Part shown: positions 40,501 to 56,024 of the stretch, in pieces
Numbering within the stretch: position 1 is the first letter of the stretch
Layout of the letters: the number at the start of each line of letters is the position of its first letter
Sequence record: NC_070962.1
Reading direction: 5' to 3' (one strand)
DNA: 64,000 bases
Notes under the pieces: model-generated
Database searches by the model: none
What the model was told of the DNA's origin: nothing
Seen by the model: the letters and a program-made list of their open reading frames with translations, nothing else
Translations under genes and position numbers: made by a program

Positions 40501-42636
40501 ATGCAAGCACGTAAAAGGTTTTTTTCAGGTAGAGAAACATCTTTATCTTTGGGAATTAAAGATTTTTCCGCAAATGACACAGTTCTTGAAGTAACTGAGG
40601 GTCGAGTTGGTTTTGGAACAACTCAGGCTGCATATCAACTTACCGTTAATGGTAGTATGCAGTTACATAATGCACTATATGATTATAAAAATTTACCTGG
40701 AGAACAAGGTCTATCTCTAATTTCTACTGGATCTTCTGTCGTTTGGGGAACACCAGAAATTACTTTTGGTGGCATTACCGTTCAAGAAGAAGGTGTAACA
40801 GTTGGTACTGCTGGTAGTGTTCAAACACTGAACTTTGTCGGTCAGAGTATTGAAGCACAGGCATTCCTAGGTATTGCAACAATTACAGTAGATCCATTCG
40901 ATCCTGCTGGTGAAAATACTTACGTGCAGTTTAATGATAATGGATCTTTTGGTGGAGCAGATGGATTAGTATATAATGGTACTCTAAAGAAAGTTGCTGT
41001 TGGTGATACTACTTTTGGATCAGAAAACCTTTATGTAACAGGTAATGTTGGTATCAGCAGTGAACTAAATGTATTAAAAGTATTTGTTGCTGACAAATCT
41101 CCGACTTTGGCAAATGAACTTGCCAGTAAAGAATATGTTGACCTCTTCGCAACTGCGGCATTGGTCATTCAGCAGGNAGTTGCTGCTGGTACTACGGAAA
41201 ATATAGCTAATAGTGTTTATGTTGATGGTTCAACAGCAGGTATTGGTAATAGTGAATTAGGTATCGGTGCATCTTTGTATTCTAGTGCGAACGGTGTACT
41301 TGTAATTGACGGATTTAGCCCAATCATTGATGATCGTATTCTAGTTAAGGATCAGACTACAGAATATGAAAATGGATTCTATGTGGTCAAAGATCCTGGA
41401 AGTGTTTCTTCTCCATGGATTATGGAAAGAACACAAGACTTCGACCAACCAGATGAGATCGTTGCTGGTGNGTTTACCTTCGTCACGAATGGTACTGTCA
41501 ACCAAGCAAACGGTTTCGTGCTTATTGATATTGTTCCTGGATTTAACAATGGTGGTTATGTTGGTTTCTCCACACTATCCTTTACACAGTTCTCTGCTGC
41601 TGGTCAGTTAGAAGCAGGTCTAGGTCTGTATAAAGATGGATCAACAATTAACGTTGGTACTGCAAGTTCTGATCGCATCAGAGTCAATACTAATGATATT
41701 GACCTTGCAGTTGTTAACACTACAGATACATTTACAGACTCTACTGAAGAAAAGTATTTTGTGACCACAGTTCAAACTGATGGTTATGGTAGAGTGACTG
41801 GAATTACAAGTGATAAGCATCAATATGCATCATATACAGATCACGGTGTTATAAGAGTTGAACCTTTAGCATTCAGTATCAATGCTGTTTCTGGTATTGT
41901 CACTGCTGCCGATTACTTCAATGTAACTAATATCAATATGCCTCTTGGTGATAATATTGGTATTGCAACTATCAACCTGATTAAAGGATGTGAGATTGAT
42001 AGTAATGGAAGTATTTTGTCAATGCAGAATGCTAATTTCCTTGGTATCGTCACTGCAAATTCATTCTCTGGTGATGGTTCTGGATTGAGTAACATTATCA
42101 CTGGTGTTGGTCTTGCAACTGAGGGTGGTTATGTTGGTAGTGGTGCAACTACTCTGGACTTCAGAGGTCCTGGTATGGGTGTTGTAACAATTGATATTTC
42201 TAGTGGTATTGGTACTGTTAATGTTGAGGGTGGTAGAGATATTGATGAGATTGGTTCTGCAAACCAAGTTCTTTATAAAGATAATAACAATACTGCAACT
42301 ACTTCTGCTAACTTACAATTTAACGGAACTAATCTAACTTGTGCAGGAACAGTTACTGCAAACTCTGACGAAAGACTTAAGAAGAATATTGAAACTATCA
42401 CTGATGCACTTCATAAAGTAAAAAGTCTTCGTGGTGTAGAGTATGATCATAAGAATACTGGTGATCATTGCTTAGGTCTAATTGCACAAGAGGTTGAGCA
42501 AGTCATTCCTCAAGTTGTATATGAAGATGCACAAGGCACTAAGTCAGTTGCTTATCAAAATATTGTTGCACTCCTAATTGAAGCAGTTAAAGATCAGCAA
42601 AGACAGATTGACGAACTTAAGAGACAACTGGGCTAA
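40501..42636 (+). CDS. tail fibre with C-terminal intramolecular chaperone (peptidase S74-like)
   Basis: NSDERLKKNIETI..ALHKVKSLRGV.Y, LGLIAQEVEQVIP.VV, VAYQNIVALLIEAVKDQQRQIDELK. Ambiguous bases at 41177 and 41471. Confidence 0.85.
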   Translation: MQARKRFFSGRETSLSLGIKDFSANDTVLEVTEGRVGFGTTQAAYQLTVNGSMQLHNALYDYKNLPGEQGLSLISTGSSVVWGTPEITFGGITVQEEGVTVGTAGSVQTLNFVGQSIEAQAFLGIATITVDPFDPAGENTYVQFNDNGSFGGADGLVYNGTLKKVAVGDTTFGSENLYVTGNVGISSELNVLKVFVADKSPTLANELASKEYVDLFATAALVIQQXVAAGTTENIANSVYVDGSTAGIGNSELGIGASLYSSANGVLVIDGFSPIIDDRILVKDQTTEYENGFYVVKDPGSVSSPWIMERTQDFDQPDEIVAGXFTFVTNGTVNQANGFVLIDIVPGFNNGGYVGFSTLSFTQFSAAGQLEAGLGLYKDGSTINVGTASSDRIRVNTNDIDLAVVNTTDTFTDSTEEKYFVTTVQTDGYGRVTGITSDKHQYASYTDHGVIRVEPLAFSINAVSGIVTAADYFNVTNINMPLGDNIGIATINLIKGCEIDSNGSILSMQNANFLGIVTANSFSGDGSGLSNIITGVGLATEGGYVGSGATTLDFRGPGMGVVTIDISSGIGTVNVEGGRDIDEIGSANQVLYKDNNNTATTSANLQFNGTNLTCAGTVTANSDERLKKNIETITDALHKVKSLRGVEYDHKNTGDHCLGLIAQEVEQVIPQVVYEDAQGTKSVAYQNIVALLIEAVKDQQRQIDELKRQLG

Positions 42637-42661: not shown

Positions 42662-44215
42662 ATGGCAAAGACCTGCAAACCAGGATATTACTGGTGCTAT
42701 ACCGACAAGAAGTGTAAAAAAATTCCTGTCGGTTGGCATGTTGGTCGTGGTGGAATGATTGAAAAAGATGATGAAGAGACCAAGAAAAAGAATGGAAATG
42801 GTGAGTCTTCTGAAGGTAATGGTGGTGAAAATGGTGGAGGAGTGAGTGAAGGAACTCTTCACAAGTGGTTCAAAGGATCCAAGTCTAAAGATGGTAAAGG
42901 TGGTTGGGTCAATGTGGTAACAGGTGGAACCTGTGCAAGTGATGAACCAGGTGAAGGAACTCCAAAGTGCGTTTCTTCATCAAAACGTGCAAGCATGAGT
43001 AAAAAGGAAAGACTTTCTGCTGCTAGAAGAAAGAAGAAAGCAGATCCTGGTCAACAACAAAAAACTGGTGCTGCTAAACCAACTTATGTTGCAACTGACA
43101 AACCAAAGAAAAAAGTAAAAGAAGATCTTGAACTCACCGATGCATATGGTGAGACTTTTGCAGTAGTACAAGACGTTATCGAGACAAAACCAATGGAATC
43201 AAAAGCACCACCTATCGAGTCATATGAAACTTATGACCTTGAAGCAATGACTGAAGGCAAGGATAAGAAAGGTAAAGGTAGTGGTACAAAAGATGCTTGT
43301 TACCATAAAGTCAAGTCCCGTTATTCAGTATGGCCTTCTGCATATGCATCTGGAGCACTAGTTAAGTGTCGTAAGGTTGGTGCTGCTAATTGGGGCAATA
43401 GCACTAAGAAAGAAGAATACTCTGATTGGAGATCAGAACTATTCAACGAGGATTGTTGGGATGGTTATGAAAAGAAAGGTATGAAGACTATGTTTGGTAA
43501 GAGATATCCAAACTGCGTTAAAAAGAAAAGTAAAAAGATAAAGGAAGATGTGGGACAAGTCAGATATTGTCCAAAGTGTGAAAAGGATGAAACTAGAGAA
43601 GAATGTGCATATGGTCCTAGATATTGGGATACATTCTCCCTACCATCAAGTCTAAAGACTACTTTTGAATCTATGGATCCAGAAGAGAGAGATGAGGTTT
43701 GTCCATACTGCAGTTGCGATCCTTGTGAGTGTGAAGGTGTAGAGATTGAAGAATCAGTAAGAGTTCCTGCAAAGACTGGCAACATCTTCTTTGTTATGGT
43801 TACTTGGAGAGGAAAAGGTTATTCTCTCAAGATGTTCTTCCCACAAGCAAAGAGACCTACCAGAAAAGAAGTTGAACTTGAAGTTCAGAAAGTCTATCCT
43901 GGTGGTAGAGTCAGATATATGGAAATTGCTGACGTAAAACCAGGTGAGCAATTCCTTCAGGTTTCTGAGGGTGCTGCTTGGACTAAAAAAGCAGGTAAGT
44001 CTGAGTCTGGTGGTCTCAATGAAAAAGGACGTAAGTCCTACGAAAGAGAGAACCCTGGTTCTGATCTAAAAGCACCTTCTAAGAAAGTTGGTAATAAAAG
44101 AAGAGCATCATTCTGTGCAAGAATGAAAGGTATGAAGAAAAAACTCACTTCTGCCAAGACTGCTAACGATCCAGATAGCAGAATCAATAAGTCCCTTAGA
44201 GCTTGGAACTGCTGA
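42662..44215 (+). CDS. modular Cys/Lys-rich late protein, probable internal head protein
   Basis: Successive short modules (CKPGYYWC; KWFKG...PKC; DACYHKVKSRY.VWPSAYASG; CWDGY...PNCV; RRASFCARM...LRAWNC), each ending in an x-x-E motif; TAAATA at 42634-42639. Confidence 0.6.
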   Translation: MAKTCKPGYYWCYTDKKCKKIPVGWHVGRGGMIEKDDEETKKKNGNGESSEGNGGENGGGVSEGTLHKWFKGSKSKDGKGGWVNVVTGGTCASDEPGEGTPKCVSSSKRASMSKKERLSAARRKKKADPGQQQKTGAAKPTYVATDKPKKKVKEDLELTDAYGETFAVVQDVIETKPMESKAPPIESYETYDLEAMTEGKDKKGKGSGTKDACYHKVKSRYSVWPSAYASGALVKCRKVGAANWGNSTKKEEYSDWRSELFNEDCWDGYEKKGMKTMFGKRYPNCVKKKSKKIKEDVGQVRYCPKCEKDETREECAYGPRYWDTFSLPSSLKTTFESMDPEERDEVCPYCSCDPCECEGVEIEESVRVPAKTGNIFFVMVTWRGKGYSLKMFFPQAKRPTRKEVELEVQKVYPGGRVRYMEIADVKPGEQFLQVSEGAAWTKKAGKSESGGLNEKGRKSYERENPGSDLKAPSKKVGNKRRASFCARMKGMKKKLTSAKTANDPDSRINKSLRAWNC

Positions 44216-44535
44216 TGAAAACCTTCAAACAATTTATGTCAGAGTCAGTCAATATCTCTGGCGACTTCAACGGAAACCTATATGTAAACTCTCAACCTGA
44301 GCAACCACAACAGGTTGGTGAAAATTATGTTGCAGATGTTACCTGGATGGGTAGCATCTATCGTCTTGAGATGGTATCCAAGAATGGTATTCCAACTAAA
44401 CAAGAACTTGGAGAACAACTACAGAAAGATTATCCTGGAGCAATGGTTCAAAACATTTATCCAGTAGAAGAAAAGAATTTCAACATTAAAAATGCAAGGA
44501 GATATCATCCTTCAAAACTAGAGTGGATTGACTGA
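44215..44535 (+). CDS. putative internal head protein with T4-type capsid-targeting sequence
   Basis: ATG overlaps the upstream TGA. The N-terminus MKTFKQFMSE resembles the T4 internal-protein capsid-targeting sequence MKTYQEFIAE. Confidence 0.65.
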   Translation: MKTFKQFMSESVNISGDFNGNLYVNSQPEQPQQVGENYVADVTWMGSIYRLEMVSKNGIPTKQELGEQLQKDYPGAMVQNIYPVEEKNFNIKNARRYHPSKLEWID

Positions 44536-44537
44536 TT

Positions 44538-45287
44538 ATGCCTTTCAAGAATTTTTTATGGGATGAAGCATGGGAACTGAATGTTTCCCGTGATAAAGTC
44601 CGTGGTGCATTTCATGTTATCAAGTTTGGAACAAATAATGATGTTGACGGTTCATTAGAAACTATTTGGGATGCTGGTGGTCTTTATACATATCTGACCA
44701 CTGCAGCAACAGTCACTGTAACTAGTACAGATGCCGACGACTCTGCTTCTGGAACTGGTGCAAGAACTGTAACCGTAGAAGGACTTGATGCAAACTATAA
44801 TCTAGTTTCAGAAACACTAACTGTTGGTGGAGGTGCAGGAACTGTTGAGTTCTATAGAGTGTTCCGTGCTTATGTTGCATCAGCTGGTTCTAGTGGTAGT
44901 AATGAAGGAACTATCTCAATTTCTTCTGGAGGAACAACTCTTGCACAAATTCGTGCTGTAGGTTCTCCAACTCTCAGAGGATTGGGTCAAACGTTTATGT
45001 GTCTATATACAGTGCCAGCAGGATACACTGGATATATCTTTGACTGGAATGTTTCAACTGCAAAAGCAGATGGTGATGTGTTCTTATTGAAGAGACTTGT
45101 CAATGATGGTGCATGGAGAACACAGGATTCTATGCATACAAACATTAATTCTATTGAGAGATCTTATAAGTTTCCACTAAAAATTGAAGAGAAAGCAGAT
45201 ATTGAAGTTAGAGCATTATCTCCAACAAACAATATGAAGTGTGCATCAACCTTCTGTATTCTGTTGGTACAAAACAACGATACTTGA
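44538..45287 (+). CDS. conserved hypothetical (probable structural) protein
   Basis: 249 aa, Thr/Gly-rich: KFG.N.DVD..ETIWDAGGLY, GARTVTVEGLDANY. Confidence 0.65.
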   Translation: MPFKNFLWDEAWELNVSRDKVRGAFHVIKFGTNNDVDGSLETIWDAGGLYTYLTTAATVTVTSTDADDSASGTGARTVTVEGLDANYNLVSETLTVGGGAGTVEFYRVFRAYVASAGSSGSNEGTISISSGGTTLAQIRAVGSPTLRGLGQTFMCLYTVPAGYTGYIFDWNVSTAKADGDVFLLKRLVNDGAWRTQDSMHTNINSIERSYKFPLKIEEKADIEVRALSPTNNMKCASTFCILLVQNNDT

Positions 45288-52705: not shown

Positions 52706-53356
52706 ATGAAACTAATTAGAGAAGAAATAGAAAAGGTAGAGGTTATTACCGAAGAAAAGAACGGTAAGAAAACTCTTTATATTCAAGGACCTTTTCTCCA
52801 AACCGAACAACAAAACCGTAACGGCAGAGTATATCGTCGTAACGTAATGGAACGTGAGGTTAAGAGATATACTGATGAGCACATTTCAAAAGGTCGTGCT
52901 CTAGGTGAACTCGGTCATCCAGATGGTCCAACCATTAACCTTGACCGTGTTTCTCACAAAATCGTTTCTCTTGAGCAAAAGGGAAATGACTTCATTGGTA
53001 AGGCACAAATCCTATCAACACCAATGGGTAAGATTGCTGAGTCTCTTCTTAAAGAAGGTGTATGTCTCGGTGTTTCTTCCAGAGGTATTGGTTCACTTCG
53101 TCCAACCAAAGAAGGTTACTCTGAAGTTGGTGAAGACTTTATGTTAGCAACTGCAGCTGATATTGTTGCTGATCCATCTGCACCTGATGCATTTGTTCAG
53201 GGAATTATGGAAGGTAAAGAATGGGTTTGGGAAGGTGGTATCCTTCGTGAACAAGCTGCAGCAAAAACTGCACGTAGAATCAACACCTTAGTTGATCAAA
53301 GAGCACTTGATGAGCACAAGCTCGGATTATTCAATGATTTTTTAAATTCACTATAA
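52706..53356 (+). CDS. gp21: prohead core protease gp21
   Basis: NRNGRVY, ALGELGHP (His), LGVSSRGIGS (Ser) and DIVADPSAPDAFV; TAAATA at 52676-52681. Confidence 0.97.
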   Translation: MKLIREEIEKVEVITEEKNGKKTLYIQGPFLQTEQQNRNGRVYRRNVMEREVKRYTDEHISKGRALGELGHPDGPTINLDRVSHKIVSLEQKGNDFIGKAQILSTPMGKIAESLLKEGVCLGVSSRGIGSLRPTKEGYSEVGEDFMLATAADIVADPSAPDAFVQGIMEGKEWVWEGGILREQAAAKTARRINTLVDQRALDEHKLGLFNDFLNSL

Positions 53357-53436: not shown

Positions 53437-54579
53437 ATGTCTAGTGACAACAATTTACAGGAAATGGAAGCAGGCACTAAGCAATCCAAAACTGCTGTTA
53501 ATTCTGGAGCTGCTGCCGCAGATCCTATGCAAAAAATGGCAGATCCTGGAACCCAACTTGCTTCTGTAGAAGATCTCGGTGGTCCTACCCCTGAGAATTA
53601 TAAGTCTGACGACGATTCAGCAAAACTCAAAGAACCAGCTGCAACACTCAAGCAAGTTAGAGATGTTGTTACTAAGTCTGCTGGTAAAGCAGATCCTATG
53701 CCAAAAGGTATGAAAGAAGAAAGTGAAGAACTAGAGGATGAAGAAATTGTCGCTGAAGAAGAAACTGCAGAAGAAGAAGTTGTCACTGAAGAAGAAGCAG
53801 CAGAAGAAGTTGTTGCTGAATCTGAAGAAGAAGTTGTCGAAGAGGCAACTGAGGAGTATGACATTGAAGAGGATGTAAATGCTCTTCTCCAAGGTGAGGA
53901 ACTCTCCGAAGAATTCCAAGAAAAAGCAAAAACCATCTTTGAAGCAGCAATCAATGCAAAGGTTGCAGCAATCAAAGAAGGTCTAGAAGCACAATACGAA
54001 GAAAAACTACTTGAAGAAGTAGCAGAAATCCAAGAAGGTCTAACTGCACGTGTTGACTCTTATCTAGAGTATGTTGCAGATGAGTGGATGTCCGAGAACG
54101 AACTCGCAATCGAACATGCACTTAAGACTGAAATGACTGAATCCTTCCTCACTGGAATGAAGGATCTTTTTGAAGCACATTATGTAACTATTCCTGAAGA
54201 AAAATACAATGTAATTGATAGCATGGTAGAAAAACTTGATGAAATGGAGACTAAACTCAACGAGCAGATTGAGAAGAATGTTTCCCTAAACTCCAGACTC
54301 GCAGAGGCTGTTGCTGAGGGTATTCTTGATCAAGTTTCTGGTGGTCTCGCCGAGACACAGAAGGAAAAGCTCGCTTCACTTGCTGAAAGTGTTGAGTTTG
54401 AAAGTGAAGAAAAATATCGTGAAAAACTGGAAATGCTAAGAGAATCATATTTCTCTACCAAGGCAGCTCCAAAAGCAAAAACTGAGACACTATCTGAAGG
54501 TGCAGATGCTGCTCCAGAAGTAGTTTCTGGATCTATGGCAGCATACCTGAAGACACTCTCTTCATTTGCTAAAAACTGA
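53437..54579 (+). CDS. gp22: prohead core scaffold gp22
   Basis: Glu-rich protein; LSEEFQEKAKTIFEAA, VDSYLEYVADEW..ENELAIE and MAAYL; between gp21 and gp23. Confidence 0.93.
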   Translation: MSSDNNLQEMEAGTKQSKTAVNSGAAAADPMQKMADPGTQLASVEDLGGPTPENYKSDDDSAKLKEPAATLKQVRDVVTKSAGKADPMPKGMKEESEELEDEEIVAEEETAEEEVVTEEEAAEEVVAESEEEVVEEATEEYDIEEDVNALLQGEELSEEFQEKAKTIFEAAINAKVAAIKEGLEAQYEEKLLEEVAEIQEGLTARVDSYLEYVADEWMSENELAIEHALKTEMTESFLTGMKDLFEAHYVTIPEEKYNVIDSMVEKLDEMETKLNEQIEKNVSLNSRLAEAVAEGILDQVSGGLAETQKEKLASLAESVEFESEEKYREKLEMLRESYFSTKAAPKAKTETLSEGADAAPEVVSGSMAAYLKTLSSFAKN

Positions 54580-54626: not shown

Positions 54627-56024
54627 ATGTTCAATTCCGAGCAGTTGCAGGAGAAGTGGGCACCCGTTCTCGACCATCAGGGTCTTGATAACATTCAAGA
54701 TTCCCATAAGAGAGCAGTTACCGCAGTCCTGCTAGAAAACCAAGAAAAATTCCTAAGAGAGCAGAACGCATTCAATTCTTCTGGCTCCTTCCTTGCTGAG
54801 GCACCAACCAACGCAGTTGGTTCTGACGGATTCCAAGGTGGATCTGCAGATGCTGGTCCTACCGCAGGTTTCGACCCAGTTCTGATTTCCCTAATCAGAC
54901 GCTCTATGCCTAACTTGGTCGCATATGACCTCGCAGGTGTTCAGCCAATGAGTGGTCCTACTGGACTCATCTTTGCAATGCGTTCCCGCTACACCAACCA
55001 GAGCGGAACCGAAGCACTGTTCAACGAAGCAGATACTGCATTCTCTGGACAAGATTCTGGATTCAACAACACCACTGGCATGTCTGGTGTTGCTTCTGGT
55101 ATGGGTACTACCGCACAGTCTGGTAGCAATCCTTCCGTCCTCAACCCAACCGCATCTGCTGACGAACTAGCATATAACGTTGGTCAGGGCATGAGAACTG
55201 ATGATGCTGAGAACCTCGGCGTCACCGATCAGTTCAACGAGATGGCATTCAGCATCGAGAAAGTTACTGTGACTGCAAAGTCCAGAGCACTCAAAGCTGA
55301 GTACTCCCTAGAACTAGCACAAGACATCAAGGCAATCCACGGTCTGAATGCTGAGGCTGAACTTGCAAATATTCTCTCTACTGAGATTCTTGCAGAGATC
55401 AACCGTGAAGTCATTCGTACCATCTATAAGGTTGCTGAGCAAGGTGCTACCGTCAACACCGCAACTGCTGGTGAGTTCGACCTAGACATCGACTCCAACG
55501 GTCGTTGGTCTGTTGAGAAGTTCAAGGGTCTACTCTTCCAAATCGAGCGTGATGCTAACCAGATTGCACAGAGAACTCGTAGAGGAAAGGGCAACATCAT
55601 CATGTGCTCTGCAGACGTTGCTTCTGCTCTAGCCATGGCTGGTGTTCTAGACTACACCCCAGCACTCAACGCAAACCTCAACGTCGATGACACTGGCAAC
55701 ACCTTTGCTGGTACTCTACTCGGTAAGTTCCGTGTATACATCGACCCATATTCTGCAAACAATTCTGCTAACCAGTATTACGTTGCAGGTTATAAGGGTT
55801 CTTCACCTTATGACGCAGGTCTCTTCTACTGCCCATATGTACCTCTCCAGATGGTACGTGCAGTTGGTGAGAACACCTTCCAGCCAAAGATTGGCTTCAA
55901 GACCCGTTATGGTCTAGTTGCTAACCCATTCGCAGAAGGTGATGTTTCTAACCAGGGTCTTGGTAGACTACAAACCAACTCCAACCGTTACTACAGACGT
56001 GTAACTGTTAAGAACCTCATGTGA
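54627..56024 (+). CDS. gp23: major capsid protein gp23
   Basis: EKWAPVL, FDPVLISLIRRSMPNL, GVQPMSGPTGLIFAMRSRY, KSRALKAEYSLELAQD and FQPKIGFKTRYG. Confidence 0.98.
   Translation: MFNSEQLQEKWAPVLDHQGLDNIQDSHKRAVTAVLLENQEKFLREQNAFNSSGSFLAEAPTNAVGSDGFQGGSADAGPTAGFDPVLISLIRRSMPNLVAYDLAGVQPMSGPTGLIFAMRSRYTNQSGTEALFNEADTAFSGQDSGFNNTTGMSGVASGMGTTAQSGSNPSVLNPTASADELAYNVGQGMRTDDAENLGVTDQFNEMAFSIEKVTVTAKSRALKAEYSLELAQDIKAIHGLNAEAELANILSTEILAEINREVIRTIYKVAEQGATVNTATAGEFDLDIDSNGRWSVEKFKGLLFQIERDANQIAQRTRRGKGNIIMCSADVASALAMAGVLDYTPALNANLNVDDTGNTFAGTLLGKFRVYIDPYSANNSANQYYVAGYKGSSPYDAGLFYCPYVPLQMVRAVGENTFQPKIGFKTRYGLVANPFAEGDVSNQGLGRLQTNSNRYYRRVTVKNLM

What the first reader, a model, noticed from the sequence alone, without database searches (positions are those of the whole stretch)
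42662..44215. Candidate capsid polyprotein: Cys/Lys-rich mini-domains separated by prohead-protease-type sites
Seen: about eight unrelated short modules, most with paired Cys and many Lys (CKPGYYWC..KKCKK; KWFKG..C..PKC; DACYHKVKSRY..KCRK; CWDGY..PNCV; CPKC..EC; CPYCSCDPCEC; VTWRG..YPG; SFCARM..WNC). The boundaries end in x-x-E: GVSE, KVKE, AMTE, KKEE, LFNE, KIKE, EIEE, QVSE. Known: T4 gp21 cleaves head proteins after (hydrophobic)-x-Glu, and gp23 here shows the matching FLAE-APTN junction. Inference: one late gene delivers a set of small basic or metal-binding peptides into the head, where gp21 releases them to condense DNA or to be ejected as early effectors. This is my best candidate for an undescribed system.
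Basis: partly seen in the sequence, partly recalled or inferred. Interest (0 to 1): 0.75.

Follow-up and report, generated by a model that had tools for sequence, protein, structure and literature searches.

The report
Protease-cut polyprotein of cyanophage head peptides
A virion protein of the marine cyanophage S-SCSM1 looks like a string of small, unrelated, mostly basic mini-proteins joined by linkers carrying the cutting signal of the phage's head-maturation protease; the same building plan recurs in thousands of ocean phage genes and appears undescribed, but the cutting itself has not been shown.

Summary
The window is Synechococcus phage S-SCSM1, and the ORF (42662..44215, 517 aa, SSCSM1_29) is a published mass-spectrometry virion protein of unknown function.

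The modules are real units. They are conserved blocks that appear in different orders and numbers in more than 6,000 related protein clusters. Fourteen unrelated module types, eight of them in this protein, are each preceded by hydrophobic-x-Glu when they are internal (52-100% of contexts against 15% expected). That motif is avoided inside module cores. It falls in predicted disordered linkers and sits where the start Met lies in free-standing copies.

The phage has a T4-type gp21 protease (Peptidase_S77), and its gp23 site aligns with the T4 site. The next gene (ORF30, a paralogue of module E) and the virion NMNAT both start with a T4-like capsid-targeting leader. Short relatives in the same terS-terL slot have the form leader + module + hydrophobic-x-Glu + DUF6321.

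Cutting at these sites would give basic 4-10 kDa modules and acidic spacers.

Not shown: the cleavage itself, a location inside the head, and the function. ORF29 also has no leader of its own.

It is a new variant of the T4 internal-protein system.

The parts
42662..44215 (+). ORF29 (SSCSM1_29): 517-aa virion protein and candidate polyprotein
   Evidence: ORF and sequence. Annotated 'virion protein' from MS of CsCl-purified virions. Member of phrog_727, with DUF6321 at aa 445-515.
42662..42763 (+). Module A (aa 1-34): C-x6-C-x5-C mini-domain, net +5
   Evidence: Conserved block. N-terminal in 103 of 127 occurrences. All 22 unique internal contexts have hydrophobic-x-Glu 4-7 aa before the first Cys.
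42764..42850 (+). Acidic Gly/Asn-rich spacer (aa 35-63) ending in V-S-E63
   Evidence: pLDDT below 50 over aa 40-63. pI 4.5. E63 is conserved in front of module B.
42851..43123 (+). Module B (aa 64-154): net +15, conserved Cys91 and Cys103, ends in V-K-E154
   Evidence: Near-invariant block. P1 is Glu in 124 of 160 unique upstream contexts. Only 3 internal hydrophobic-x-Glu against 45 expected.
43124..43255 (+). Acidic spacer (aa 155-198) with a conserved ELTDAYGE element and two sites (V-I-E174, M-T-E198)
   Evidence: pI 4.0-4.3. Low pLDDT. The ELTDAYG element recurs after hydrophobic-x-Glu in relatives.
43256..43450 (+). Module C (aa 199-263): three-helix, net +7, Cys213 and Cys236. Its tail carries the YSDWRSELFNE spacer motif ending at E263.
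   Evidence: (P1 is Glu in 94 of 138).
43451..43546 (+). Module D (aa 264-295): beta-hairpin, net +7, Cys265 and Cys285, ends in I-K-E295
   Evidence: Hydrophobic-x-Glu lies upstream in 93% of 158 unique internal contexts.
43547..43753 (+). Acidic 8-Cys segment (aa 296-364): a C-x2-C...C element and a 5-Cys cluster, net -12, ends in I-E-E364
   Evidence: Present in only about a third to a half of relatives. Charge. It is the only part with enough Cys for a metal site (inference).
43754..43969 (+). Module E (aa 365-436): beta-beta-alpha-beta fold, net +6, paralogue of ORF30, ends in V-S-E436
   Evidence: BLASTP against ORF30 gives 36% identity over 50 aa, E 2e-8. P1 is Glu in 74 of 76 contexts. 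Model.
43970..44212 (+). Module F (aa 437-517): includes DUF6321, net +15, Cys485 and Cys517, with a conserved internal L-N-E454
   Evidence: Pfam E 3e-22. Found stand-alone in podoviruses and behind capsid-targeting-like leaders in short relatives.
44215..44535 (+). ORF30 (106 aa): stand-alone module-E paralogue. Its first 10 residues (44215-44244) form a T4-like capsid-targeting leader ending in M-S-E|S.
   Evidence: Compared with the T4 ipII/ipIII leaders read from NC_000866. The leader is nearly invariant in 113 relatives. It is one of only 2 strict matches among 2234 Met starts in the genome, against 0.14 expected.
44538..45287 (+). ORF31 (249 aa): virion protein that always follows in the terS-terL slot. 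Its role is unknown and it is not shown to be part of the system.
   Evidence: Synteny with S-SKS1.
52706..53356 (+). gp21 prohead protease, the proposed processing enzyme
   Evidence: Pfam Peptidase_S77, E 2.5e-35. Annotated as a virion protein.
53437..54579 (+). gp22 scaffold with an acidic N-terminal extension rich in hydrophobic-x-Glu. Possible docking partner for the basic polyprotein (inference).
   Evidence: T4_CASP domain at aa 143-373. Sequence and sites.
54627..56024 (+). gp23 major capsid protein. The reference gp21 site L-A-E58|A lies at nt 54792-54800.
   Evidence: Aligns with the T4 gp23 L-T-E65|A site. Pfam Gp23.

Best explanation
ORF29 is a late-expressed polyprotein that is built into the prohead and then cut in trans by the phage's T4-type prohead protease gp21.

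The cuts fall after Glu in hydrophobic-x-Glu motifs that sit in disordered linkers. The likely sites are E63, E154, E174, E198, E263, E295, E364 and E436, with E34 and E454 as possible extras.

Cutting would release five or six small basic, mostly two-Cys mini-proteins: A, B, C, D, E and F (4-10 kDa, net +5 to +15). These would stay with the packaged DNA. The acidic spacers would be discarded, as scaffold fragments are in T4.

Shown here:
- the module architecture and its shuffling among relatives;
- the conserved junction grammar and its avoidance inside modules;
- the presence of the protease and of a matching gp23 site;
- T4-like targeting leaders on the paralogue ORF30 and on short relatives;
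- presence of the protein in virions, from published MS.

Inferred:
- that the cuts happen;
- that the protein is inside the head;
- how it gets there without a leader of its own (N-terminal module A, or electrostatic binding to the acidic scaffold);
- what the peptides do. Charge neutralisation or condensation of DNA is the most likely role, given the extreme conservation and basicity and the stand-alone copies next to capsid genes in podoviruses. Co-ejection as early effectors is the alternative.
For: Virion presence: annotation and MS.

Family: more than 8000 hits and 6456 clusters at 50% identity.

Modules: conserved blocks whose order varies among relatives, for example B-D-C-F, D-B-F-A and E-B-C.

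Junction grammar:
- P1 is Glu and P3 is V/M/I/L/F before modules B-F.
- 61% of 549 module starts have the motif, against 2.2% of other linker positions.
- Thirteen module types have hydrophobic-x-Glu upstream in 52-100% of unique internal contexts, except one anchor set too far downstream. The expectation is 15%. Hydrophobic-x-Asp occurs in only 0-13%, or 2 of 6 contexts for one small type. That list includes five types absent from ORF29.
- Module A has the motif in 22 of 22 internal contexts, at the position the start Met occupies in N-terminal copies.

Depletion inside cores: module B has 3 motifs against 45 expected, and module E has 12 against 46.

Structure: six of the ten sites in ORF29 lie inside segments with pLDDT below 50.

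Charge: predicted products alternate between basic and acidic.

Protease and reference site: gp21 is Peptidase_S77. The gp23 site L-A-E|A aligns with T4 E65.

Targeting leaders:
- ORF30's leader matches the T4 leader at residues 4, 7, 8 and 10. PMC9026906 identifies these as the targeting and processing residues.
- ORF30 is a paralogue of module E.
- Short DUF6321 proteins have the form leader + module + hydrophobic-x-Glu + DUF6321. One of them sits in the same terS-terL slot on a T4-like contig that carries Peptidase_S77.
- The virion NMNAT carries the same kind of leader.
Against: - There is no direct evidence of cleavage. The published MS data are given only at protein level.
- ORF29 starts with module A, not with a capsid-targeting leader, and most long relatives also lack one.
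- P3 is mostly V/M here. The sites listed for T4 gp23 and gp24 and the T4 ipII/ipIII leaders read have L or I at P3.
- In S-SCSM1 the gene lies next to tail-fibre genes.
- A near-invariant L-N-E454 lies inside the best-conserved domain, so not every motif can be a site.
- Within ORF29 alone the motif count is not above chance.
- ORF30 was not among the MS-detected virion proteins.
- Because the motif travels with each homologous module, the many occurrences are not independent. The independent evidence is about 14 module types.
Confidence: 0.65

Rival explanations
1. ORF29 stays intact and is an ordinary multi-domain accessory protein of the virion (tail, neck, baseplate or head). The hydrophobic-x-Glu motifs are just a shared linker or N-cap feature of the modules.
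For: The gene sits between tail-fibre genes and terL. There is no N-terminal capsid-targeting leader. The MS detection does not distinguish the intact from the processed form. The motif count in the single protein is not above chance.
Against: About 14 unrelated modules share the same junction, with Glu strongly preferred over Asp. The motif is avoided inside cores. The junction sits exactly where free-standing copies begin. Short relatives in the same slot carry T4-like targeting leaders. Module order is free, which is hard to reconcile with a fixed structural role.
Confidence: 0.15
2. ORF29 is a prohead-core (scaffold-like) component that gp21 degrades and that mostly leaves the head. Its role would be in assembly, and it would not supply peptides that stay with the DNA.
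For: The same site grammar occurs in the acidic part of gp22. In T4, gp22, gp67 and gp68 are degraded to small peptides that leave the prohead (PMC9958956). The cyanophage reviews consulted report that gp67 and gp68 are missing from cyanophages.
Against: The protein is detected in mature CsCl-purified virions. The modules are strongly basic, which favours retention on DNA. Stand-alone copies exist in T7-like podoviruses (no prohead protease gene among the annotated genes of the fetched stretches), beside separately annotated scaffold genes.
Confidence: 0.1
3. The modules are external capsid decoration or cement proteins, or they act only inside the infected cell and contaminate virion preparations.
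For: In podoviruses the stand-alone genes lie next to the major capsid gene. Paired Cys could form disulfides in an exposed, oxidising position (inference).
Against: The cryo-EM structure of the related podovirus P-SCSP1u shows no decoration proteins (PMC10575957). Very basic 4-10 kDa proteins and capsid-targeting-type leaders point to the interior. There is no Pfam or fold match to known decoration proteins.
Confidence: 0.05

Closest known systems
T4 internal proteins (IPI, IPII, IPIII, Alt), targeted by the capsid targeting sequence and trimmed by gp21
   Same: - Both are small basic proteins encoded by a T4-type phage that has a Peptidase_S77 protease and a gp22 scaffold.
- Both have a hydrophobic-x-Glu junction.
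- ORF30, the NMNAT and short family members carry a 10-12 residue leader with the same key positions: 4, 7, 8 and 10.
- The repertoire differs from phage to phage.
   Different: - T4 proteins are single units with one N-terminal propeptide. ORF29 strings six to eight unrelated units with a site before each and acidic spacers between them.
- ORF29 has no leader of its own.
- There is no sequence or fold similarity to T4 internal proteins.
- The module sequences are extremely conserved, unlike the fast-evolving T4 set.
Inner-body and ejection proteins of phiKZ-like giant phages (phiKZ, 201phi2-1, SPN3US), cut at several x-x-Glu sites by a gp21-like prohead protease
   Same: Several Glu-specific cuts per head protein, redundant sites in propeptide regions, and retention of mature fragments with the DNA (PMC9026906).
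   Different: Those proteins are large, and one mature fragment is kept after the propeptides are removed. They are not a chain of independent shuffled mini-domains. No homology was found, and the P3 preference is different.
Polyvalent proteins of phages and conjugative elements (Iyer et al. 2017, PMC5512222)
   Same: One polypeptide that combines many unrelated domains, is packaged and delivered with the DNA, and is proposed to be cut into units. Domain order is variable.
   Different: Polyvalent proteins carry enzymatic effector domains and an embedded peptidase (MPTase) for self-processing. ORF29 has no enzyme or peptidase domain. Its units are 3-10 kDa basic modules, and the proposed protease acts in trans inside the prohead.
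Adenovirus core protein precursors (pVII, pre-Mu/pX), trimmed by the viral protease inside the capsid (own knowledge, not tested here)
   Same: Very basic DNA-condensing peptides made as precursors and released by a capsid-resident protease during maturation.
   Different: A eukaryotic virus, an unrelated protease and unrelated proteins. Each precursor yields one basic product rather than a series.
Pfam DUF6321, DUF3008, DUF5661 and PHROG families 727, 3477, 12753, 4689 and 1742
   Same: ORF29 and its relatives are members by HMM score.
   Different: These entries carry no function. The searches made here found no paper on the junction grammar or the link with the protease.

Membership tests
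T4-type head-internal proteins (capsid-targeting leader, processed by gp21) | N-terminal leader of about 10 residues: aromatic at 4 and 7, hydrophobic at 8, Glu at 10 | tested here: not met
   ORF29 begins with the Cys module A (MAKTCKPGYYWC...) and has no such leader. The neighbouring paralogue ORF30 does meet this feature, and so do short relatives.
T4-type head-internal proteins (capsid-targeting leader, processed by gp21) | Hydrophobic-x-Glu motif at the junction between the removed part and the retained part | tested here: met
   Seven junctions in ORF29 fit the motif. It is conserved in front of about 14 module types across the family and depleted within cores.
T4-type head-internal proteins (capsid-targeting leader, processed by gp21) | The same genome encodes a Peptidase_S77 prohead protease and a T4-type scaffold, with a matching site in gp23 | tested here: met
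   Pfam Peptidase_S77 E 2.5e-35, T4_CASP E 1.4e-80, Gp23 E 2.4e-147. The gp23 L-A-E58|A site aligns with T4 E65.
T4-type head-internal proteins (capsid-targeting leader, processed by gp21) | Protein present in purified virions | tested here: met
   Checked by look-up, not by experiment here. GenBank product 'virion protein'. PMC9602691 reports 45 virion proteins from MS of CsCl-purified particles. No peptide-level data are held.
T4-type head-internal proteins (capsid-targeting leader, processed by gp21) | Actual cleavage by gp21, location inside the head, and exit with the DNA | not testable with these tools
   Needs virion top-down or semi-specific MS, a gp21 assay, and localisation or ejection experiments.
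Pfam DUF6321 | HMM score above the gathering threshold | tested here: met
   79.5 bits against a cut-off of 28.5. The match covers aa 445-515 and the whole 72-position profile.
Polyvalent proteins (Iyer et al. 2017) | Several enzymatic or effector domains plus an embedded processing peptidase in one chain | tested here: not met
   Pfam finds only DUF6321 in ORF29. Relatives add only DUF3008, DUF5661 and DUF192. No peptidase domain was found. Definition taken from PMC5512222.
Capsid decoration proteins (Soc/Hoc-like) | Sequence or fold similarity to a known decoration protein | tested here: not met
   No Pfam, PDB-sequence or Foldseek match.
Zinc-ribbon or other metal-binding mini-domains | Four conserved ligands (Cys/His) per unit | tested here: inconclusive
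   Modules B, C, D and F have only two near-invariant Cys each, which fits a disulfide better than a metal site. Module A has three Cys and a half-conserved His. The acidic segment at aa 296-364 has 8 Cys but is present in only a minority of relatives. Cys geometry in the model could not be read out.
Anti-phage defence or counter-defence families (PADLOC) | HMM match | tested here: not met
   No hit for ORF29 or ORF30 at E up to 0.1.

The most novel reading that the evidence does not exclude
T4-like cyanophages, and probably other marine T4-like phages, use the terS-terL slot as a combinatorial loading dock. Mini-protein cassettes, each carrying its own protease-site leader, are shuffled into polyproteins of two to more than ten units. 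The prohead protease unpacks them inside the capsid.

In this reading the released peptides do more than neutralise DNA charge. They are ejected with the genome as the first phage proteins in the cell. One example would be module E/ORF30, whose model weakly resembles the RNA-polymerase binders T7 Gp2 and YkzG. Enzymes such as the NMNAT would ride in by the same leader.
Probability: 0.3. Interest if true: 0.85.

Novelty: new variant of a known kind. Interest (0 to 1): 0.72.

Why it matters
T4-like cyanophages are among the most abundant viruses of the ocean's main primary producers, yet the reviews and genome papers I could search say nothing about what they carry inside the capsid besides DNA.

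If this reading is right, several things follow:
- It identifies a nearly universal gene family: 498 phage records and more than 6,000 clusters at 50% identity.
- It gives that family a simple, testable grammar of protease-released head peptides.
- It shows that the T4 capsid-targeting leader exists in cyanophages.
- It explains why a metabolic enzyme (NMNAT) turns up in cyanophage virions.
- It gives a short tag and a junction rule that could be used to load proteins into cyanophage heads.
- It adds a trans-processed polyprotein of mini-domains to the known ways in which tailed phages deliver proteins.

Tried and rejected
Function by homology led nowhere:
- Pfam gives only DUF6321, and the PHROG families have no function.
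- PADLOC gives nothing.
- A profile search of PDB sequences gives nothing at E up to 1.
- Foldseek of the ORF29 model against the PDB has a best E of 0.67 (phi29 p6, not significant). Against BFVD it finds only family members.
- Foldseek of the ORF30 model has a best E of 0.54. The T7 Gp2 and YkzG resemblance (E 0.88, target TM 0.67) is a lead only.

Peptide-level MS evidence: the one supplement held for PMC9602691 lists genes and BLAST hits but no peptides.

Late promoter: no TATAAATA lies near ORF29, and the motif is not enriched in the window. 'Late gene' therefore rests on position only.

Simple enrichment of hydrophobic-x-Glu within ORF29 alone is not significant.

An unsupervised test used the start points of BLAST alignments between unassigned segments. 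It gave a weaker but same-direction signal: 146 of 285, about 51%, against roughly 20% expected.

The KKEE252 border was rejected as a site. It has no hydrophobic P3 and is not conserved.

Internal repeats were rejected, because the modules are unrelated to one another.

It was re-run without that protein.
Full report
**What the sequence is.** The window is the first 64 kb of Synechococcus phage S-SCSM1 (MK867354.2), a T4-like cyanophage of the Kyanoviridae, in the record's own coordinates. The finding is one intact ORF, 42662..44215 on the + strand. It encodes 517 aa and is named SSCSM1_29 / QFG06285.1. GenBank calls it 'virion protein'. The paper on the phage explains that such labels come from mass spectrometry of CsCl-purified particles, in which 45 phage proteins were detected (PMC9602691). 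The supplement held here gives no peptide-level data. Upstream lie terS and three tail-fibre or virion genes. Downstream lie ORF30, ORF31 (a virion protein), terL, sheath, tube, portal, gp21, gp22 and gp23.

**Checking the observation.**
- The protein has 77 Lys and 19 Cys.
- Seven of the eight borders have a hydrophobic residue two positions before the Glu. KKEE252 does not.
- The modules are unrelated to one another.
- Taken alone, ORF29 does not hold more [LIVMF]-x-E than shuffled versions: 10 against 7.7 +/- 2.4. The case therefore has to rest on where the motifs are and on relatives.

**The modules are real, and they are shuffled.** The family is very large: more than 8000 hits in one search and 6456 clusters at 50% identity in the other, essentially all from marine metagenomes and cyanophages. 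Conservation along ORF29 falls into these blocks:
- A: aa 3-31
- B: aa 64-150
- C: aa 199-246
- D: aa 264-288
- two Cys clusters: aa 300-318 and 345-358
- E: aa 365-432
- F: aa 437-517, which includes DUF6321

The blocks are separated by variable stretches. HMMs of the blocks show that relatives carry them in different numbers and orders, for example B-D-C-F, D-B-F-A, E-B-C and A-A-B-C-D-F. Relatives also carry other modules that ORF29 lacks, including DUF3008, DUF5661, DUF192 and several unnamed ones.

**The junction rule.**
- In unique sequence contexts, the residue just before modules B, C, D, E and F is Glu in 124/160, 94/138, 97/147, 74/76 and 83/143 cases. V, M, I, L or F dominates two positions earlier.
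- In 149 representative proteins, 61% of 549 module starts are preceded by hydrophobic-x-Glu. The figure is 2.2% for other linker positions and 0.6% for core positions.
- With sequence anchors, thirteen module types have the motif in the ten residues upstream in 52-100% of unique internal contexts. The exception is module C, whose anchor lies too far downstream. The expectation is 15%. The same motif with Asp is rare, at 0-13% (2 of 6 contexts for one small type). Five of these types are absent from ORF29.
- Module A is N-terminal in 103 of 127 occurrences. In all 22 unique internal contexts it has the motif 4-7 residues before its first Cys, which is where the start Met sits in N-terminal copies. 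The same equivalence holds for modules B, GWSDKYK, DUF3008 and NPRIPRK.
- Inside module cores the motif is avoided. Module B has 3 against 45 expected and module E has 12 against 46. Module F has 9 against 44 once a single conserved L-N-E is set aside.
- The occurrences within one module type are not independent, because the motif is inherited with the module. The independent evidence is that about fourteen unrelated modules obey the same rule.

**The link to the head protease.**
- S-SCSM1 has a Peptidase_S77 protease (gp21), a T4-type scaffold and gp23.
- Its gp23 has L-A-E58|A exactly where T4 gp23 has L-T-E65|A. [quoted passage not shown]
- The gene after ORF29, ORF30, is a paralogue of module E: 36% identity over 50 aa, E 2e-8.
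- ORF30 starts with a ten-residue leader that shares M1, K2, T3, F7 and E10 with the ipII and ipIII leaders read from the T4 record. It has an aromatic residue at position 4 and a hydrophobic residue at position 8.
- According to PMC9026906, residues 4 and 7 of that T4 leader direct targeting to the capsid and residues 8 and 10 direct processing.
- The leader is nearly invariant in 113 ORF30 relatives.
- In the whole 228.8 kb genome, only two of 2234 Met starts fit a strict form of this pattern, against 0.14 expected. They are ORF30 and the NMNAT, ORF91. The NMNAT is an enzyme that the authors were surprised to find in virions. Its leader is conserved from residue 1 in other cyanophages.
- Short DUF6321 proteins (85-142 aa) from metagenomes very often have the form leader + optional module + hydrophobic-x-Glu + DUF6321. 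One of them lies in the same terS-terL slot on a T4-like contig that also carries Peptidase_S77.
- The slot is also conserved in S-SKS1 and ACG-2014f, where the chain is split or extended differently.

**Physical plausibility.**
- The AlphaFold model (mean pLDDT 66) gives small folded units separated by eight segments with pLDDT below 50.
- Six of the ten motifs lie inside those segments. E263 lies two residues beyond one, and E436 is in a block with a mean of 58. E34 and E454 are in better-predicted parts.
- Cutting at the motifs outside cores would give basic pieces: A +5, B +15, C +7, D +7, E +6 and F +15, with pI 9.4-10.5. These would alternate with acidic pieces of pI 4.0-4.5. One of the acidic pieces is an 8-Cys segment with net charge -12.
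- Modules B, C, D and F each have two near-invariant Cys. That suits a disulfide staple better than a metal site. This could not be checked on coordinates.

**Relatives without the protease.** In the T7-like podoviruses HTVC304P and P-SCSP1d, DUF6321 and a GLYANIHAKRKR-type module are free-standing, very basic proteins of 48-84 aa. They are encoded beside the scaffold and major capsid genes, with no leader. They have Ala where the T4-like family has the Glu of L-N-E. The cryo-EM structure of the related P-SCSP1u shows no decoration proteins on the capsid (PMC10575957). This argues for an interior, DNA-associated role for these modules and against a surface role.

**Most likely mechanism.**
1. 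ORF29 is made late. This is inferred from its position, because no TATAAATA of its own was found.
2. It enters the prohead core.
3. It is cut by gp21 after Glu at its linker sites.
4. The basic modules remain with the DNA, and the acidic spacers leave, as scaffold fragments do in T4.

How ORF29 is recruited without a leader is open. In T4 the leader is found on IPII and IPIII but not on other core proteins (PMC9958956), so its absence does not exclude core membership. Two candidates are the predominantly N-terminal module A and electrostatic binding to the acidic, site-rich N-terminal extension of gp22. Both are guesses.

For function, I favour DNA charge neutralisation or organisation. The modules are extremely conserved and basic, and they occur in protease-less phages next to capsid genes. 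Ejection as early effectors is not excluded. The ORF30 model weakly resembles T7 Gp2 and YkzG (E 0.88, target TM 0.67), which is a lead and not evidence.

**Comparison with what is known.**
- The system works like the T4 internal proteins and like the multiply-cut head proteins of phiKZ-like phages.
- ORF29 fails one defining feature of the T4 class, because it has no N-terminal leader.
- It differs in kind of architecture: many unrelated units in one chain, each with its own site.
- Polyvalent proteins (PMC5512222) share the idea of many domains in one delivered chain. However, they carry enzymes and an embedded peptidase, and none is found here.
- I found no paper that mentions capsid-targeting sequences or internal proteins in cyanophages, or any of the DUF families involved.
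- I rate it as a new variant of a known kind.

**Weak points.**
- No direct proof of cleavage or of location in the head.
- ORF29 has no leader.
- ORF30 itself was not among the MS-detected proteins.
- The P3 preference (V/M) differs from the L or I seen at the T4 gp23, gp24 and ipII/ipIII sites.
- A conserved motif lies inside DUF6321.

The cheapest decisive test is a semi-specific re-search of the existing virion MS data for peptides that begin right after the junction Glu residues.

Noticed in passing
window 44215-44244 (start of ORF30, 44215-44535): ORF30, annotated 'hypothetical protein', begins with a ten-residue T4-like capsid-targeting leader that ends in M-S-E|S. The leader is nearly invariant in 113 relatives. 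ORF30 is a strong candidate for a cyanophage internal head protein, although it is not listed among the MS-detected virion proteins.
   Followed up: yes
outside the window: S-SCSM1 record 88819-90048 (L008:24819-26048), ORF91 NMNAT: The virion-associated NMNAT/cytidylyltransferase starts with the same kind of leader (ending L-K-E|A). It is the only other strict match in the genome, and the leader is conserved from residue 1 in P-SSM2, S-SSM7, ACG-2014f and others. This would explain why the enzyme is found in cyanophage virions.
   Followed up: partly
window 43418-43450 (ORF29 aa 253-263): A portable spacer motif, [FY]-S-[DN]-W-[RK]-x-[ED]-hydrophobic-x(0-2)-E, recurs in 65 of 388 family proteins directly in front of different modules (D, F, C and others). 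It may be an internal recognition or targeting element.
   Followed up: partly
window 53716-53931 (gp22 aa ~94-165): The scaffold protein has a strongly acidic N-terminal extension with repeated E-E-V-V-x-E units and many hydrophobic-x-Glu motifs. It lies upstream of the T4_CASP domain (aa 143-373). It is a possible docking surface for the basic polyprotein.
   Followed up: no
L004:2727-3201 (Pelagibacter phage HTVC304P) and L005:2959-3377 (Prochlorococcus phage P-SCSP1d): T7-like podoviruses encode free-standing, very basic 35-84 aa proteins between the scaffold, major capsid and tail-tube genes. These include DUF6321, a GLYANIHAKRKR-type module and a Lys-rich peptide. They have no leader. 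The Glu of the conserved L-N-E in DUF6321 is Ala in both phages.
   Followed up: partly
window 44245-44262 (ORF30 aa 11-16), compared with L002:4190-4207 (T4 gp22 aa 25-30): The six residues after the ORF30 leader (SVNISG) almost repeat the six residues after the I-F-E24 motif of T4 gp22 (SVNISP). This could be chance or a shared P1'-P5' preference. It is unexplained.
   Followed up: no
window 44215-44535 (ORF30) and 43754-43969 (module E): The AlphaFold model of ORF30 has a beta-beta-alpha-beta core whose best small-domain PDB matches are the RNA-polymerase binders T7 Gp2 (E 0.88, target TM 0.67, rmsd 2.0 over 51 columns) and YkzG. The matches are not significant and are only a lead.
   Followed up: partly
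window 36304, 41177, 41471: There are three ambiguous bases (N) in the deposited sequence. The two at 41177 and 41471 give X in the translation of the tail-fibre gene 40501-42636.
   Followed up: no
window 40501-42636: The tail-fibre gene just upstream ends in a Peptidase_S74 (endosialidase chaperone) domain at aa 622-674. It is therefore probably a self-cleaving fibre, unrelated to the finding.
   Followed up: no
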